10,817 bases of DNA from Octopus sinensis. Lineage: Eukaryota. Each line of letters opens with the position of its first letter. Position 1 is the first letter of the stretch. The stretch lies in assembly GCF_006345805.1 (NCBI RefSeq), contig NW_021827228.1, positions 1 to 10,817 of the forward strand, written 5' to 3'. Below the pieces are notes generated by a model. The model was not told the origin of the DNA. It made no database searches and worked only from the letters and a program-made list of their open reading frames with translations. Positions 354 through 10,817 of this stretch are shown here, piece by piece. Both the position numbers and the translations under genes were made by a program.

Positions 354-1004
354 TCAGAACGTAACGGCAGACGAAATACCTATTTCTTTACTACCCACAA
401 GGGACTAAACACAGAGAGGACAAACAAGGTCAGACAAACGGTTTAAGTCGATTATATCGACTCCAGTGCGTAACTGGTACTTCATTTATCGACCCCGAAT
501 GGCAAAATCGACCTCGGTGGAATTTGAACTCAGAACGTAGCGGCTGACGAAATACCGCTAAGCTTTTCGCCCGGCGTGCTAACGTTTCTTATTTCTTTAT
601 TGCTTACAGGGGACTAAACCTAAACGGGACAAACAAGGACAGACAAACGGATTAAGTCGATTATATCGATCCCAGTGCGTAACTGGTACTTATTTAATCG
701 ACCCCAAAAGGATGAAAGGCAGAGTCGACCTCGGCGGAATTTGAACTCAGAACGTAGCAGCAGACGAAATACCTATTTTTTTACTACCCACAAGGGGCTA
801 AACACAGAGAGGACAAACAAGGACTGACAAACGGATTAAGTCGATTATATTGATCCCAGTGCGTAACTGGTACTTATTTAATCGACCCCGAAAAGATGAA
901 AAGCAAAGTCGACCTCGGCGGAATTTGAACTCAGAACGTAACGGTGGACGAAATACCGCTAAGCATTTCTCCCAACGTGCTAACGATTCTGCCAGCTCGC
1001 TGCT
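352..1004 (-). mobile_element. Head-to-tail multimer of family-B tRNA-derived SINE (three bodies plus a stub)
   Basis: Minus-strand units 1004-774 (full head; A box tggcagaatcg, B box gagttcaaattcc), 773-590, 589-381 and stub 380-352. The motif ctcagaacgta recurs at 353, 529, 746 and 930. Confidence 0.9.

Positions 1005-2834: not shown

Positions 2835-2883
<49 letters not shown>
2835..2883 (+). repeat. (TAA)~16 microsatellite
   Basis: Direct reading; left flank of the 2884-3429 element. Confidence 0.95.
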
Positions 2884-2884
<1 letters not shown>

Positions 2885-3453
2885 CAGTACCAGGCAGTGG
2901 CTCTCATGGCTTCTGATCTTAACTGATTGGAAGTGTCATCATGTACATTGTTTTGTCTTGGTATAAAAGATGGGCTACAGCAAATATTCTGCTCAATACC
3001 ACAGATTTGCTTGTCAGTTGTTTGACCTTAACCAGTTGAGCATGTCCCTTAGTGGCTGATGATATGTGCATCTCTGATCACGAGCAGAAGTAGTGGGGGA
3101 GCATCATAGCCATGTGTTGAGAGGGATTCTTTGGGGTTTGAATAATTCACCTCTGGAAATATGGGTGGTTTTTTCAACATCCTTAAACAACCCTTATTCA
3201 GGGACCGTTTGAGCGGGATGGGCTACTCAACCTGAAGAAAATTCTAACTGGGCCCCACCTGCAAGGTCATGTGCTGTTTATCTTGATATGAGATGACCAT
3301 GTCGCGCACATATGGTTGTGATGCATGAGCCTGGTGTACCCTTATCAGACGGGTAGTCATGATGGGTATATTGGGCTTCGTATATTTTACCCCAGTGTCA
3401 CTTTGATGGCATGAACTGCTCTCTCACTCAATAATAATAATAATAATAATAAT
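2884..3453 (+). mobile_element. ~550-bp non-coding interspersed element bounded on both sides by (TAA)n; probably a non-LTR retroelement 3' part or non-autonomous derivative
   Basis: A complex sequence (gcagtaccaggcagtggctctc...gctctctcactc) starts directly after (TAA)n at 2884 and ends directly before (AAT)8 at 3430-3453. No long ORF. I recall it as a common octopus repeat; the clade is not verified. Confidence 0.65.
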
Positions 3454-3505
3454 GGCTTCAAACTTTGCAACAAGGGCAGTCATTTTGGGGGAGGGGATGT
3501 GTCGA
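3454..3505 (-). mobile_element. 3' tail fragment of a B-related SINE variant (family C)
   Basis: Minus strand reads tcgacacatcccctcccccaaaatgactgcccttgttgcaaagtttgaagcc then (ATT)n. It begins at the TCGAC hairpin arm seen in family B but has a different tail. The family is recalled from memory; there is no second copy in the window. Confidence 0.5.
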
Positions 3506-3642
3506 TTTTGCCTTTCCTCCTTTCGGGGTCGGTAAATTAAGTACCAGTTACGCACTGGGGTCGCTGTAATTAGCTTAATCCCTTTGTCTGTCCTTGTTTG
3601 TCCCCTGTATGTTTAGCCCCTTGTGGGCAATAAAGAAATAGG
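3501..3642 (+). mobile_element. Family-B SINE body and tail, headless
   Basis: ttgcctttcctcctttcggggtcggtaaattaagtaccagttacgcactgggg...ccccttgtgggcaataaagaaatagg is the reverse complement of the bodies at 381-910. Confidence 0.9.
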
Positions 3643-3651
3643 AAACTTTTA

Positions 3652-4349: not shown

Positions 4350-4462
4350 GGTCCAAGAACACCGAGGCTATAGTAGAAGACACTTACACAAAGTGCCACG
4401 CAGTGGGACTGAACCCGGAACCATGTGGTTCGTAAGCAAGCTACTTACCACACAACCTCTCT
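4350..4462 (-). mobile_element. Family-A SINE head plus start of the CORE-like segment
   Basis: ccgaggctatagtagaagacactt...gtgccacgcagtgggactgaacccggaaccatgtggtt...gctacttaccacac is the reverse complement of 5050-5146. Confidence 0.9.
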
Positions 4463-5045: not shown

Positions 5046-5204
5046 AGTGGCTGTGTGGTAAGTATATTGCTTACCAACCACATGGTTCTGGGTTCAGTCC
5101 CACTGCGTAGCACCTTGGGCAAGTGTCTTCTACTATAGCCTCGGGCCGATCAAAGCCTTGTGAGTGGGTTTGGTAGACGGAAACTGAAAGAAGCCTGTCT
5201 TATG

Positions 5205-5902: not shown

Positions 5903-6297
5903 TTTAATCATTTGTTTCATGCATTAGACAGTGACCATGCTGGGGCACCACCTTGAGGAACTTTTTAGTTGAATAAATCGACCCCAGCACTTATTTTTTA
6001 AAGCCCAGTGCTTACTCTATCGGTTTCTTTTTGCAAACGAAGTTACAGAGACGCAAACAAACCAACATCGGTTGTCAATTGGCGATGGGGACAAACACAG
6101 ACACAACCCCACCACACACATACGCAGGCATACGCCCCCACCACACGTACATATGTACGACGGGCTTCTTTCAGTTCCCGCCTACCAAATCCACTCCACA
6201 AGGTTTTGGTTGGCTCGAGGCTATAGTAGAAGACATTTGTCCAAGGTTCCACTCAGAGGGGCTGAAACCTGAACCATGTGGTTGGGAAGCCAGCTTA
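5903..6297 (-). mobile_element. Older, near full-length family-A SINE
   Basis: Contains the reverse complements of the tail (ccatgctggggcaccacc), tcggttgtcaa, gggcttctttcagtt, ctaccaaatccactc, gaggctatagtagaagac and the head (gaaccatgtggttgggaagc). Confidence 0.88.
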
Positions 6298-8904: not shown

Positions 8905-9015
8905 TAGGAAATGAAGTAGCCTGTTCAAGAATACAATGCACGGCCGGTTCAGGACTTGAACCTGTGACTTTATGATCGTAGGCCGAACACCCTACCACTA
9001 GGCCACGTGCCTTCA
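8905..9015 (-). mobile_element. Family-D SINE head (diverged)
   Basis: Minus strand reads tgaaggcacgTGGCCTAGTGGtagggtgttcggcctACGatcataaagtcacaGGTTCAAGTCCtgaaccggcc: A box, ACG anticodon position and B box. Paralogous to 1-76. Confidence 0.8.
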
Positions 9016-9045
9016 GTGACGGGTATTTTTCATTGGACTAGGGGA

Positions 9046-9426
9046 AGCACTCTGTCGGTTACGACGATGAGGGTTCCGGTTGATCCGAATCAACGGAACA
9101 GCCTGCTCGTGAAATTAACGTGTAAGTGGCTGAGCACTCCACAGACACGTGCACTCTTAACGTAGTTCTCGGGGATATTCAGCGTGACACAGAGAGTGAC
9201 AAGGCCGTTCCCTTGAAATACAGGTACAACAGAAACAAGAAGTAAGAGTGAGAGAAAGTTGTGGTGAAAGAGTACAGCAGGGATCACCACCATCCCCTGC
9301 CGGAGCACGTGGAGCTTTTAGGTGTTTTCGCTCAATAAACACTTACAACGCCCGGTCTGGGAATCGAAACCGCAATCCTATGACCGCGAGTCCGCTGCCC
9401 TAACCACTGGGCCATTGCACCTCCAC
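9046..9426 (-). mobile_element. Full-length tRNA-derived SINE (family E)
   Basis: A box TGGCCCAGTGG (9414-9404), B box GGTTTCGATTCCC (9371-9359), then a ~300-bp body. The segment gagaactacgttaag...gtgtctgtgg...gagcaggctgttcc is reminiscent of the Deu/Nin SINE domain (from memory, unverified). Confidence 0.85.
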
Positions 9427-9672
9427 TTTCAATGGACTAGCAGTGCTACGTTCCGATCTCTTCATAATGTTTTGAGTAGACGCAGGAGTAACCTAGAGCC
9501 GTGTTAAGCCTTTCACAGCGCTTGCTACTTTTGAAATACTTCTAGAGGACATACATCTAGGGGAACGAATCTTTCAGAGCTGTCCGCTGATCCGGTGAGA
9601 AGTTCGGAGGGGATGTTAACAAACAGCGGATAATGGAAGACTTTGGTGGAGTTAGTTAGTTCATTGATTTAC

Positions 9673-9750
9673 CGGAAGGGGGCATGGCGGTTGTGTGACG
9701 TCGAGCTATTTTGGTGAGTTTATTGATTGTCGCGTAATTTGAGTGGAGTT
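9673..9750 (-). CDS. Probable exon A (78 nt) with candidate start codon at 9685-9683 (MPPS + G)
   Basis: Strong acceptor ctttctctctttctccatAG (9752-9751) and donor CCG|gtaaat (GT at 9672-9671). Only the phase-1 frame is open (xLHSNYATINKLTKIARRHTTAMPPS). The ATG lies in ACCGCCATG, a strong Kozak context. G + TT of exon B gives Val in frame. Confidence 0.62.
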
Positions 9751-9759
9751 CTATGGAGA

Positions 9760-10630
9760 AAGAGAGAAAGAAGGAACGGTGGTGGTGCTGGGGGAGAATT
9801 ATAGGATAGAGAATGAGAGAGAGAAGAGAGAGAAGGTGGAGATGTGGATAGAAAGGGATAGATGGTATGATTAGACAGGCGATAAAATATAATTGAGATA
9901 ATGGAGGGGATAATAGCGATAAAGAAGGAAGGGGAGACAAGTAAAAGGTTTGAGAGAGGGGGAGTGTGTCACATAAAGATTCTCTGAGGGTGAGTGAAAC
10001 CAGGCTGATGAGAGGGGGAAACTGATAGGCGGAGTGATAAAGAGGTGAAGTAAGAGATATGGAGAGGGAGAGAGGGAGAGAGAGAGAGAGGGTGTGTGTC
10101 TATGAAGTGAAAGAAAGACCATCTACGACGGGTTGAGAGTATACAAGGGAGAGAGAAAGAGAGAGAGAGAGAGAGGCAGATAGATATATGAAGAGGAATG
10201 ATATATGAGTAAGATTATACGAAGGAGAGAGGACAAATACGAGAGAGAGAGAGAGAGAGAAAAAATGTTGAGGGGCAGAGAGAGAGAGGGGGGAGAAGAG
10301 AGGGAGAGGGAGAACAGAGGGAGAGGGAGAACAGAGGGAGAATGGGAGGTAGAAAGAGAAAAGCGAGAACGATGAGGGATAGAGAGAACTAGAGAGAGAG
10401 AGAGAGAACGATGAAGGGCAGAAAGAAGAGAGAGAGAGAGAGAGAGAGAGAGCGAACGATGAGGGCAGAAAGAGAGAAAGGGAGAAGAGAGGGAGAAAGA
10501 GAAAGAGAGAGAGAGAAAGAGAGGTAGAAAGAGAAGAGCGAGAATGATGAGGGATAGAGAGAGGTAGAAAAAGAGAGATAGAACAATGAAGGGCAGGAAG
10601 AAAGAGAGAGGGAGAGAAAGTGGGGATGGT
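9760..10630. repeat. GA-rich polypurine/polypyrimidine tract with a degenerate minisatellite
   Basis: (GA)n runs plus a recurring gaacgatga(a)ggg-like motif at 10367, 10406, 10454, 10542 and 10581. Confidence 0.9.
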
Positions 10631-10690
10631 ATGATGGTATTGGGCTAGATGTCAGTGGGGAGGTCAATATTATCGACTGCGCCTGTCAAT

Positions 10691-10710
10691 ACGTCCATAG
10701 CAACCAATGA
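10691..10710. promoter_or_regulatory. RFX X-box half-site (CCATAGCAAC) overlapping an NF-Y-type CCAAT box
   Basis: acgtCCATAGCAAC at 10691-10704; AACCAATGA at 10702-10710 fits RRCCAATSR. Confidence 0.55.
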
Positions 10711-10730
10711 CAGTGTGATACGCTGAGAGG

Positions 10731-10739
10731 ACTCACGTG
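10731..10739 (-). other. Candidate 5' splice donor (CAC|gtgagt) overlapping a CACGTG E-box
   Basis: Plus-strand actcac (10731-10736) is GTGAGT on the minus strand; CACGTG at 10734-10739. All three minus frames from 10817 hit stops, consistent with a non-coding first exon. Confidence 0.45.
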
Positions 10740-10742
10740 TCA

Positions 10743-10756
10743 GTTGCTATGGAAAC
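10743..10756. promoter_or_regulatory. Canonical RFX X-box GTTGCTATGGAAAC
   Basis: Matches the established RFX/DAF-19 consensus GTHNYYATRRNAAC at every position. Confidence 0.75.
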
Positions 10757-10799
10757 AATAGGATATCAATCTCTAACATTTCAATGAAATGTAGTTGAA

Positions 10800-10813
10800 C
10801 CACCAGGGGGAGC
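10800..10813 (+). promoter_or_regulatory. CTCF-like core motif CCACCAGGGGGAGC
   Basis: 13/14 match to the canonical core CCACCAGGGGGCGC. Confidence 0.5.
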
Positions 10814-10817
10814 TGGC

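What the first reader, a model, noticed from the sequence alone, without database searches (positions are those of the whole stretch)
10691..10756. Paired RFX X-boxes with CCAAT and E-box: ciliary-type promoter signature
Seen: within 66 bp lie a CCATAGCAAC half-site, an overlapping CCAAT box, CACGTG and a full-consensus X-box GTTGCTATGGAAAC, with a GTGAGT donor pointing into the minus-strand gene. Established: RFX factors drive ciliogenesis genes through X-boxes near the TSS in nematodes, flies and vertebrates, and X-box plus NF-Y pairing is known from MHC class II promoters. Inference: the unknown gene (or a divergent neighbour beyond the window) is an RFX target, so it is a candidate novel cilium or sperm-flagellum component.
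Basis: partly seen in the sequence, partly recalled or inferred. Interest (0 to 1): 0.7.

Follow-up and report, generated by a model that had tools for sequence, protein, structure and literature searches.

The report
RFX X-box pair, unproven promoter
A 130-base single-copy stretch at the very edge of the window carries a textbook binding site for the cilia-gene regulator RFX, an inverted partial copy of it and several other promoter-type motifs. No gene, transcript start or conservation could be shown, so it stays a plausible but ordinary candidate regulatory element.

Summary
All the reported motifs are at the stated coordinates.

**What is there**
- GTTGCTATGGAAAC (10743-10756) is the only match in the window to the nematode X-box consensus. 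It is the same 14-mer as the human DCDC2 promoter X-box, which binds RFX1 and RFX2 in gel shifts.
- The "second X-box" is not independent. It is one arm of a perfect 11-nt inverted repeat, 16 nt if a 3-nt bulge is allowed. By chance this has P about 4e-4, given the X-box.
- Around it lie the window's only RRCCAATSR NF-Y box, a CACGTG, a 17-nt palindrome and a near-consensus CTCF site.

**What is missing**
- The window has no credible coding exon, no CpG island at the site, and no ORF behind the proposed minus-strand donor. GTGAGT occurs 11 times in the window.
- The window ends 61 nt to the right of the X-box.
- No related sequence from the source lineage could be retrieved, so conservation is untested.
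- In C. elegans only 93 of 4,291 X-box hits survived a conservation filter.

**Verdict**
It is a plausible RFX-responsive regulatory module (about 0.45). Its geometry fits a plus-strand start beyond the window better than the minus-strand gene. The ciliary-gene inference is speculative. Interest is low to moderate.

The parts
10743..10756 (.). Full palindromic X-box, GTTGCTATGGAAAC. It is predicted to bind an RFX dimer. The strong half is GTTGCT and the weaker half is GGAAAC.
   Evidence: 0 mismatches to GTHNYYATRRNAAC and the only site in the window. 1 mismatch to GTNRCCNNRGYAAC. Identical to the human DCDC2 X-box bound by RFX1/2 (PMC5024701).
10691..10704 (-). Partial X-box. On the minus strand it reads GTTGCTATGGACGT: the strong half-site and spacer are kept, and the distal AAC is replaced by CGT.
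   Evidence: Sequence reading. GTTRCY half-site match at 10699 on the minus strand.
10694..10753 (.). Inverted repeat or hairpin-capable unit. The arms are TCCATAGCAAC (10694-10704) and GTTGCTATGGA (10743-10753). After a 3-nt bulge (CAA) they extend as TGACA (10708-10712) and TGTCA (10738-10742). The loop is 10713-10737.
   Evidence: Perfect 11-nt arms. The only such inverted repeat in the window that is not low-complexity. Fold z-scores are -4.6 (RNA, plus strand), -3.95 (RNA, minus strand) and -4.3 (DNA). The chance of an inverted copy of an X-box within 80 nt is 3.9e-4.
10702..10710 (+). NF-Y type CCAAT box, AACCAATGA (RRCCAATSR). It overlaps the last base of the left RFX half-site.
   Evidence: The only RRCCAATSR match in the window, where 1.43 are expected anywhere in the window. 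P = 0.008 for one falling inside the 66-nt span.
10734..10739 (.). Palindromic E-box, CACGTG, in the context TCACGTGT. This is a bHLH-ZIP type site.
   Evidence: One of 4 CACGTG sites in the window; the other three lie at 9004-9311 in the stretch with tRNA-derived SINE heads. P = 0.008 in the span.
10731..10736 (-). GTGAGT, a donor-like hexamer on the minus strand. It overlaps the E-box.
   Evidence: Present, but it is one of 11 GTGAGT and 21 GTRAGT sites in the window. No ORF lies behind the proposed junction.
10776..10792 (.). Perfect 17-nt palindrome, ACATTTCAaTGAAATGT. It contains TTCNNNGAA.
   Evidence: Arms of 8 nt with 1 nt between them. The only compact palindrome in the window with arms >=8 that is not low-complexity.
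10800..10814 (+). CTCF-like site, CCACCAGGGGGAGCT. The window ends 3 nt after it.
   Evidence: 1 mismatch to CCASYAGRKGGCRSY. Expected 0.03 per window, and 5 of 200 shuffles have any such site.
9750..10617 (.). GA-rich low-complexity tract that bounds the module on the left. It includes a 175-nt unit repeated 1.9 times at 10290-10617.
   Evidence: Tandem-repeat search, composition profile and repeat families D2 and D12.

Best explanation
Window 10680-10817 is a compact, single-copy cluster of binding sites for regulatory proteins. It most likely acts as an RFX-responsive cis-regulatory element.

**Proposed mechanism (inferred)**
- An RFX dimer binds the palindromic X-box at 10743-10756.
- A second RFX molecule can bind the strong half-site kept in the inverted copy at 10695-10704.
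- NF-Y competes or cooperates at the overlapping CCAAT box (10702-10710).
- A bHLH-ZIP protein binds CACGTG (10734-10739).

**Likely orientation (inferred)**
The order CCAAT, E-box, X-box, followed by an initiator-like TCAATCT at 10767-10773, fits a plus-strand start around 10770 or a little further right. The regulated gene would then lie beyond the right end of the window. Alternatively, the module is an intronic enhancer or alternative promoter of a plus-strand transcript that starts at the ETS/YY1/CRE-like block at 9671-9713.

**Origin of the second site (inferred)**
Its 11/11 identity, and the TGACA/TGTCA extension outside the RFX recognition sequence, point to a local inverted duplication such as a replication template switch. 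They do not point to independent evolution of a second site.

**Shown versus inferred**
- Shown: the motifs, their quality, the inverted repeat and its improbability, and single-copy status within the window.
- Inferred: protein binding in the source organism, promoter activity, orientation, and any link to cilia.
For: - The X-box matches the consensus exactly and is unique in the window.
- The identical 14-mer binds human RFX1 and RFX2 and is needed for DCDC2 promoter activity (PMC5024701).
- The RFX DNA-contacting residues and the GTTRCY half-site are conserved from fungi to animals (PMC10530576). Binding by the source organism's RFX is therefore a fair expectation.
- The only RRCCAATSR box in the window lies inside the cluster, together with a CACGTG.
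- NF-Y motifs are enriched in RFX1-3 ChIP peaks, and those peaks centre just upstream of transcription starts (PMC7498320).
- Within 60 nt to the right lie a near-consensus CTCF site (expected 0.03 per window) and a perfect 17-nt palindrome.
- CTCF motifs are reported at cephalopod domain boundaries and loop anchors (PMC13652810).
- The segment has no copy elsewhere in the window.
- Two X-boxes acting together are known from C. elegans F25B4.2 (PMC3245922).
Against: - No gene, ORF or protein homology lies anywhere near the cluster.
- CpG observed/expected is 0.58 at 10601-10800, below the window average of 0.76, so there is no CpG-island signature.
- The surroundings are SINE copies and microsatellites.
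- An X-box match alone predicts poorly: 4,291 hits fell to 93 conserved in C. elegans, and Drosophila control genes carry X-boxes as often as targets.
- From, about 8e-6 chance sites per base are expected. That is roughly 20,000 in a genome of 2.7 Gb, a size taken from my own knowledge of octopus genomes.
- All the accessory motifs were recognised after the fact.
- The CCAAT box overlaps the left half-site, so both cannot easily be occupied at once.
- The spacings do not match documented NF-Y partner spacings: 12 bp for USF E-boxes and 29 bp for RFX5 in MHC-II (PMC4889920).
- Conservation, chromatin state and transcription are all untested.
Confidence: 0.45

Rival explanations
1. The sequence is neutral and has no regulatory role. 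A chance X-box match in unique intergenic or intronic DNA was partly copied in inverted orientation by a replication template-switch event. The CCAAT, CACGTG, CTCF-like and palindrome matches are what anyone finds when reading 130 nt with a large motif vocabulary.
For: - The expected genome-wide load of chance X-box matches is in the tens of thousands (derived).
- Published motif-only X-box screens have high false-positive rates.
- The inverted repeat extends beyond the RFX recognition sequence (TGACA/TGTCA) and is 11/11 identical. This points to copying rather than selection on two sites.
- Template switching is documented to create perfect inverted repeats and hairpins in a single event (PMC5453318, PMC8794818).
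- There is no gene, CpG island or ORF nearby.
Against: Several independent high-information features fall within 130 nt of unique sequence, while the remaining 10.7 kb has none:
- the 14-nt X-box;
- the 15-nt CTCF-like site, expected 0.03 per window;
- the only RRCCAATSR box;
- the only compact 8-nt-arm palindrome.

The window shows no general excess of short perfect inverted repeats: one was found where about 0.8 is expected for arms >=10 (my arithmetic). A high local template-switch rate is therefore not evident.
Confidence: 0.33
2. The module is part of a transposable element that carries X-box-like sequences in a palindromic core. The element would continue beyond the right end of the window. 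Any RFX binding would be a by-product of the element.
For: Such elements exist.
- The metagenome scan found a MITE-like family in L002, L007, L014, L016, L030, L047, L051, L065 and L070.
- It is about 350-410 bp long with terminal inverted repeats of 30-57 nt.
- It has an internal perfect inverted pair of full X-boxes, GTTACCATAGCAAC and GTTGCTATGGTAAC, 47-55 nt apart. This is the same architecture as in the window.

The rest of the window is saturated with mobile-element copies. The segment is rich in dyad symmetries, as subterminal transposon regions often are.
Against: - There is no second copy in the window.
- There is no similarity to the MITE family beyond the 10-mers that were searched for.
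- No target-site duplication flanks the 11-nt arms (ACG on the left, AAC on the right). The inverted symmetry stops after 16 nt.
- The position where a left terminal repeat would lie is occupied by the GA-rich tandem repeat.
Confidence: 0.1
3. The cluster is the promoter of a minus-strand gene whose first exon ends at 10737 and splices to about 9750, and that gene is an RFX-driven cilium or sperm-flagellum component.
For: - A GTGAGT donor lies on the minus strand at 10736-10731.
- A pyrimidine-rich run ends in AG near 9751.
- The minus strand at 9690-9681 reads ACCGCCATGC, a good initiation context, followed by a possible GTAAAT donor (my reading).
- The quality of the X-box is as described above.
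Against: - GTGAGT occurs 11 times in the window.
- The 'acceptor' is simply the edge of an 870-nt CT-rich tract.
- The ORF at the Kozak-like ATG is 9 codons long, and no coding exon follows on the minus strand.
- In this orientation the CCAAT box and the second RFX site fall inside the intron and the X-box inside exon 1. This is the reverse of the usual promoter order (for RFX peaks lying just upstream of starts).
- RFX targets are far from exclusively ciliary.
Confidence: 0.08
4. The inverted repeat is a gene for a small structured RNA, such as a miRNA-like hairpin. The protein-binding motifs are then incidental.
For: The segment folds much better than shuffles on both strands: z = -4.6 on the plus strand and -3.95 on the minus strand for 68 nt.
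Against: - The plus-strand fold is an 11-bp stem, then an 11-nt one-sided internal loop, then short helices. This is far from the roughly 30-bp, near-symmetric stem of a miRNA precursor.
- There is no Rfam match at gathering score or at E <= 1.
- The good fold follows trivially from one 11-nt inverted repeat.
Confidence: 0.04

Closest known systems
Human DCDC2 promoter X-box (RFX1/RFX2-bound; Tammimies et al. 2016, PMC5024701)
   Same: The 14-mer GTTGCTATGGAAAC is identical, and the next base (A) also matches. In the human promoter this sequence is supershifted by RFX1 and RFX2 antibodies, and mutating it lowers reporter activity.
   Different: The flanks are unrelated. The human site lies in a mapped, conserved promoter of a known ciliary gene. 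Here no gene, transcription start or conservation is known, and nothing suggests orthology.
Nematode and Drosophila ciliary-gene X-box promoters (DAF-19/dRFX targets)
   Same: It matches the 14-nt consensus used in those screens exactly. Palindromic X-boxes are the class over-represented among true dRFX targets.
   Different: Those sites are defined by position (preferably -50 to -200 from the ATG) and by conservation between species. Neither can be shown here: no ATG-led ORF follows within the window on either strand.
C. elegans F25B4.2, a gene with two cooperating X-boxes (PMC3245922)
   Same: Two RFX-type sites lie in one regulatory region. In that paper one site drives and the other represses expression.
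   Different: There the two motifs are separate, full 15-bp X-boxes found by comparative genomics. Here the second site is a truncated, exactly inverted copy 38 nt away, and its function is unknown.
MHC class II S-X-X2-Y module (RFX5 complex with NF-Y)
   Same: An X-box-type sequence (CCATAGCAAC, compared with CCTAGCAAC) lies next to a CCAAT box.
   Different: - The CCAAT box overlaps the left RFX half-site and lies about 43 nt from the full X-box, instead of the fixed spacing (peak at 29 bp).
- There is no CRE-like X2 box.
- The RFX5/RFXAP/RFXANK/CIITA machinery is a vertebrate system (established knowledge, not tested here).
MITE-like element with an internal inverted pair of X-boxes, from unidentified eukaryotic DNA in metagenome contigs (L002 family)
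   Same: Two X-box sequences share the core CCATAGCAAC / GTTGCTATGG, in inverted orientation, 47-55 nt apart.
   Different: That family has 30-57-nt terminal inverted repeats, several copies per sample and two complete X-boxes. The window's element shares nothing else with it, has one complete X-box, and shows no terminal repeats.
Template-switch-generated inverted repeats (Loytynoja and Goldman 2017, PMC5453318; PMC8794818)
   Same: It is a short perfect inverted repeat with a nearby spacer, created in an otherwise unrelated sequence. This explains why the identity runs past the protein-recognition bases.
   Different: The event itself cannot be reconstructed without an outgroup sequence. This explains the origin of the repeat, not its function.

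Membership tests
RFX X-box (binding site of RFX/DAF-19 winged-helix factors) | Sequence matches the 13-15-nt inverted-repeat consensus (GTHNYY AT RRNAAC, or GTNRCC N0-3 RGYAAC). | tested here: met
   10743-10756 has 0 mismatches to the first pattern and 1 to the second. The left copy at 10691-10704 keeps only one half-site.
RFX X-box (binding site of RFX/DAF-19 winged-helix factors) | The sequence is bound by an RFX protein. | not testable with these tools
   The identical 14-mer binds human RFX1/2 in EMSA (PMC5024701), and RFX specificity is conserved across animals and fungi. Binding by the source organism's RFX is inferred, not shown.
X-box promoter of a ciliary gene (DAF-19/dRFX/RFX2-3 target) | The X-box lies close to the start of a gene: preferably -50 to -200 from the ATG in nematodes, and peaks lie just upstream of the transcription start in mouse. 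| tested here: inconclusive
   No credible ORF or exon lies within the window on either side. Only 61 nt are visible to the right, and both ATGs there (10788, 10793) run into stop codons within a few codons (my reading).
X-box promoter of a ciliary gene (DAF-19/dRFX/RFX2-3 target) | The motif is conserved in sequence and position at the orthologous promoter of related species. | not testable with these tools
   No related locus could be fetched.
- 10 window ORFs are not in the protein collection.
- 3 protein searches gave no hits.
- A 20-mer scan of metagenome contigs gave no hits.
- The collections on hand hold no cephalopod genome.
X-box promoter of a ciliary gene (DAF-19/dRFX/RFX2-3 target) | RFX-dependent expression in ciliated cells, and a ciliary function of the product. 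| not testable with these tools
   No expression data are available and no gene has been identified.
MHC class II-type S-X-X2-Y enhanceosome module | Fixed X-to-Y spacing and an X2 (CRE-like) box next to X1. | tested here: not met
   The middle A of CCAAT (10706) is 6.5 nt from the centre of the left half-site, so they overlap. It is 43.5 nt from the centre of the full X-box, against a reported peak at 29 bp. No TGCGTCA or TGACGTCA lies next to either site.
Miniature inverted-repeat transposable element | Terminal inverted repeats flanked by a target-site duplication, and multiple copies. | tested here: inconclusive
   The bases flanking the 11-nt arms (ACG on the left, AAC on the right) are not a duplication. 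There is no other copy in the window or among the fetched loci. Genome-wide copy number cannot be tested, and the right side is cut off by the window end.
miRNA precursor or other known structured RNA | A long, nearly symmetric stem of about 30 bp, or a match to a curated RNA family. | tested here: not met
   The fold is an 11-bp stem followed by an 11-nt one-sided loop. There is no Rfam match at 10600-10817 at gathering score or at E <= 1.

The most novel reading that the evidence does not exclude
The cluster is the genuine RFX/NF-Y-type promoter of an unannotated gene or non-coding transcript lying just beyond the window. Its second RFX site was born in a single step by a replication template switch that copied the X-box in inverted orientation. 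That would be a concrete example of a new binding site created by this mutational mechanism in a cilia-type promoter of a cephalopod.
Probability: 0.1. Interest if true: 0.5.

Novelty: new member of a known kind. Interest (0 to 1): 0.25.

Why it matters
If the module is real, it would flag an RFX-regulated transcription unit in a lineage where RFX targets have not been mapped. One full-text search for RFX, X-box and cephalopod returned a single, unrelated paper. The gene next to it would then be a reasonable candidate for a cilium, flagellum or other RFX-controlled function.

The exact inverted copy would also show how a second binding site can arise in one mutational step.

As it stands, this is one motif cluster in repeat-rich DNA with no gene attached. 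Published X-box screens show that such calls are mostly false unless they are conserved. Its practical value is as a pointer for a five-minute check in a genome browser.

Tried and rejected
**1. Looking for a gene in the window.**
- Six-frame ORFs are all low-complexity or SINE-derived.
- Ten of the less repetitive ORFs have no Pfam family.
- There is no tRNA gene and no Rfam family at gathering score.
- At E <= 1 there are only microsatellite-driven miRNA-like hits and a sub-threshold tRNA-like SINE head.

**2. Retrieving the source contig or orthologous loci.**
- Exact look-up of 10 ORFs found none in the collection.
- Homology searches with the two ORFs nearest the cluster (10389-10667 minus, 9656-9940 minus) gave no hits.
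- A SINE-derived ORF, intended to identify the organism, also gave no hits.
- An exact 20-mer scan of metagenome contigs gave no hits.
- The source organism therefore remains unconfirmed.

**3. Scanning metagenome contigs for the paired-arm pattern** (CCATAGCAAC N25-55 GTTGCTATGG).
- It returned 70 loci. That is roughly the order expected by chance for a collection of 1e11-1e12 bases, which is my own estimate of its size.
- They are unrelated hairpins, tandem repeats and one MITE family. None is related to the window.

**4. CpG-island test.** There is no enrichment at the cluster. SINE copies dominate the CpG-rich bins.

**5. Bacterial promoter and terminator scan**. It does not apply to a eukaryotic window and was ignored.

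**6. Structured-RNA reading.** Rejected on stem geometry and the lack of a family match.

**7. MHC-II SXY reading.** Rejected on spacing.

Full report
**What is in the sequence**

The finding sits 61 nt from the right end of the window. All reported motifs are present at the stated coordinates:

| Motif | Position |
|---|---|
| CCATAGCAAC | 10695-10704 |
| CCAAT | 10704-10708 |
| CACGTG | 10734-10739 |
| GTTGCTATGGAAAC | 10743-10756 |
| GTGAGT (minus strand) | reverse complement of 10731-10736 |

- The 14-mer matches the nematode X-box consensus GTHNYYATRRNAAC without mismatch. It is the only such site in 10.8 kb. The expected number is 0.17 strand matches, and 8 of 200 dinucleotide shuffles reach the observed count.
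- Against the vertebrate pattern GTNRCCNNRGYAAC it has one mismatch.
- The CCAAT lies in AACCAATGA, the only RRCCAATSR match in the window.

**The two X-boxes are one inverted repeat**

- The left 'half-site' is an arm of a perfect 11-nt inverted repeat: TCCATAGCAAC at 10694-10704 and GTTGCTATGGA at 10743-10753, with 38 nt between them.
- After a 3-nt bulge the symmetry continues as TGACA and TGTCA, which lie outside the RFX recognition sequence.
- This is the only perfect inverted repeat in the window that is not low-complexity (arm >=10, spacer <=80).
- It makes the segment fold far better than shuffles: z = -4.6 and -3.95 for the two RNA strands, and -4.3 for DNA.
- In a simulation, a given X-box has an inverted copy of >=11 nt within 80 nt with probability 3.9e-4. 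The pairing is therefore not chance.
- The exactness and the extension beyond the protein-contact bases point to copying, not to two sites selected independently. Replication template switching is documented to make such repeats in one step (PMC5453318, PMC8794818).
- The left copy keeps the strong half-site GTTGCT and the spacer but lacks the distal AAC. On the minus strand it reads GTTGCTATGGACGT.

**How good is the RFX site?**

- A full-text search for the 14-mer found it in one paper. It is the X-box of the human DCDC2 promoter, used as an EMSA probe.
- That probe is supershifted by RFX1 and RFX2 antibodies, and mutating the site lowers promoter activity (PMC5024701).
- RFX DNA-contacting residues and the half-site GTTRCY are conserved from fungi to animals (PMC10530576).
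- I therefore regard RFX-binding potential as well supported. It has not been shown for the source organism.

**Context**

- The window contains no credible protein-coding sequence. All ORFs of 50 aa or more are microsatellite translations or lie in SINE copies, and ten of the less repetitive ones have no Pfam match.
- There are no tRNA genes or Rfam families. A sub-threshold tRNA match at 8941-9011 on the minus strand marks a tRNA-derived SINE head.
- Repeat analysis shows SINE families and many microsatellites.
- Directly left of the cluster lies an 870-nt GA-rich tract (9750-10617), which includes a 175-nt unit repeated 1.9 times.
- The segment 10618-10817 has no copy elsewhere in the window.
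- CpG observed/expected at 10601-10800 is 0.58, below the window mean of 0.76.
- Two further features lie to the right of the X-box. One is a perfect 17-nt palindrome, ACATTTCAaTGAAATGT (10776-10792). The other is CCACCAGGGGGAGCT (10800-10814), one mismatch from a 15-nt CTCF consensus, with 0.03 expected per window.
- CTCF motifs are reported at cephalopod domain boundaries and loop anchors (PMC13652810).
- So about 130 nt of unique DNA hold most of the window's high-information motif matches. This is my main reason to favour function. These features were recognised after the fact, however.

- The minus-strand donor GTGAGT is one of 11 in the window.
- The proposed acceptor near 9750 is the end of the CT-rich face of the GA tract.
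- Behind it, the minus strand has a Kozak-like ACCGCCATGC at 9690-9681 but only a 9-codon ORF.
- In that orientation the X-box would be inside exon 1, and the CCAAT box and second RFX site inside the intron.
- RFX peaks centre just upstream of transcription starts (PMC7498320).
- NF-Y boxes usually lie about 60-100 nt upstream of starts. This is established knowledge, not tested here.
- A plus-strand start near 10770 would place CCAAT at about -63, CACGTG at about -33 and the X-box at -26 to -13. An initiator-like TCAATCT lies at 10767-10773, but it is low-information.
- A second promoter-like block lies on the plus strand at the left edge of the GA tract. It holds ACCGGAAG (9671), ATGGCGG (9684), TGACGTC (9696) and GGTGAGT (9713).
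- The X-box module could then also be an intron-1 enhancer or an alternative promoter of a plus-strand transcript.

**Prior odds**

- In C. elegans, 4,291 X-box hits upstream of genes fell to 93 after a three-species conservation filter (PMC1794439).
- In Drosophila, negative-control genes carry degenerate X-boxes as often as targets do, and conservation was needed to find real targets (PMC2375033).
- In Salpingoeca, 44 of 239 promoters with the motif belong to the conserved ciliome.
- In mouse ependymal cells, fewer than a third of RFX peaks are in promoters.
- From, the chance density is about 8e-6 sites per base. That means tens of thousands of chance matches in a genome of a few Gb.
- The accessory motifs raise the odds.
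- The exact inverted copy raises them little, because it is explained equally well by neutral copying.

**Related sequences**

- I could not obtain any. Exact look-ups, three protein homology searches and a 20-mer scan of metagenome contigs all gave nothing.
- A scan for the paired-arm pattern returned 70 unrelated loci, none similar to the window.
- One family among them is informative as a precedent. It is a MITE-like element with 30-57-nt terminal inverted repeats and an internal perfect inverted pair of complete X-boxes 47-55 nt apart.
- Transposon-borne X-box pairs therefore exist. This keeps the transposon rival alive until copy number in the source genome is checked.

**Comparison with known systems**

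- The module works like, and may be a member of, the class of RFX X-box regulatory elements with NF-Y and E-box partners. NF-Y motifs are enriched in RFX1-3 peaks.
- It is not an MHC-II-type S-X-X2-Y module. The spacings do not fit and there is no X2 box.
- It is not a recognisable structured RNA.

**Verdict**

| Reading | Probability |
|---|---|
| Functional RFX-responsive regulatory element | about 0.45 |
| Neutral coincidence plus inverted duplication | about 0.33 |
| Transposon-borne | about 0.10 |
| Structured RNA | about 0.04 |

- If real, it is a new member of a known kind.
- Interest is 0.25. The decisive check is a genome-browser look at the source and sister genomes, which is simple but outside these tools.

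Noticed in passing
window 10800-10814 (+): CCACCAGGGGGAGCT differs by one base from the CTCF consensus CCASYAGRKGGCRSY. The expected number is 0.03 per window, and 5 of 200 shuffles have any such site. It lies 44 nt right of the X-box, and the window ends 3 nt after it.
   Followed up: partly
window 10776-10792: A perfect 17-nt palindrome, ACATTTCAaTGAAATGT, containing TTCNNNGAA. It is the only compact palindrome in the window with arms >=8 that is not low-complexity.
   Followed up: partly
window 9671-9720: A second promoter-like block lies at the left edge of the GA-rich tract. On the plus strand it reads ACCGGAAG (ETS-like), ATGGCGG (YY1-like), TGACGTC (CRE-like) and then GGTGAGT. On the minus strand the same bases read as a Kozak-like ACCGCCATGC followed by a 9-codon ORF and a possible GTAAAT donor.
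   Followed up: partly
window 9750-10617: An 870-nt GA-rich tract (CT-rich on the minus strand), with a 175-nt unit repeated 1.9 times at 10290-10617 (84% matches). It separates the two promoter-like blocks.
   Followed up: partly
L002:1638-2046, L047:1334-1728, L070:130-477 (also L007, L014, L016, L030, L051, L065): A MITE-like element of about 350-410 bp in metagenome contigs, with several copies per sample. It is presumably DNA of an unidentified eukaryote. It has 30-57-nt terminal inverted repeats (ACACTGTGTCTCAATAAAAACCGG...) and an internal perfect inverted pair of complete X-boxes, GTTACCATAGCAAC and GTTGCTATGGTAAC, 47-55 nt apart. A mobile element like this could spread RFX-type sites.
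   Followed up: partly
window 381-957 and 3501-3649: A 184-nt unit occurs three times in tandem (63-88% identity), with an inverted copy 2.6 kb away (85%). Further SINE-like copies lie at 4362-4460, 5046-5144 and 6197-6290. tRNA-like heads lie at 1-75 (by eye), 8941-9011 (Rfam tRNA, 24.3 bits, below threshold) and about 9340-9425 (by eye).
   Followed up: partly
window 2880-3450: A stretch of about 540 nt that is not low-complexity, bracketed on both sides by (AAT)n runs with similar junctions (TCACCATATAATAAT... and TCACTCAATAATAAT...). It looks like an insertion or repeat unit bounded by microsatellites.
   Followed up: no
L025:631-719: A tandem repeat with a unit of about 31 nt, found in a metagenome contig. 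It shares a 17-nt exact match (ATACGTCCATAGCAACC) with window 10689-10705. This is probably chance, because the locus was selected on the 10-mer.
   Followed up: no
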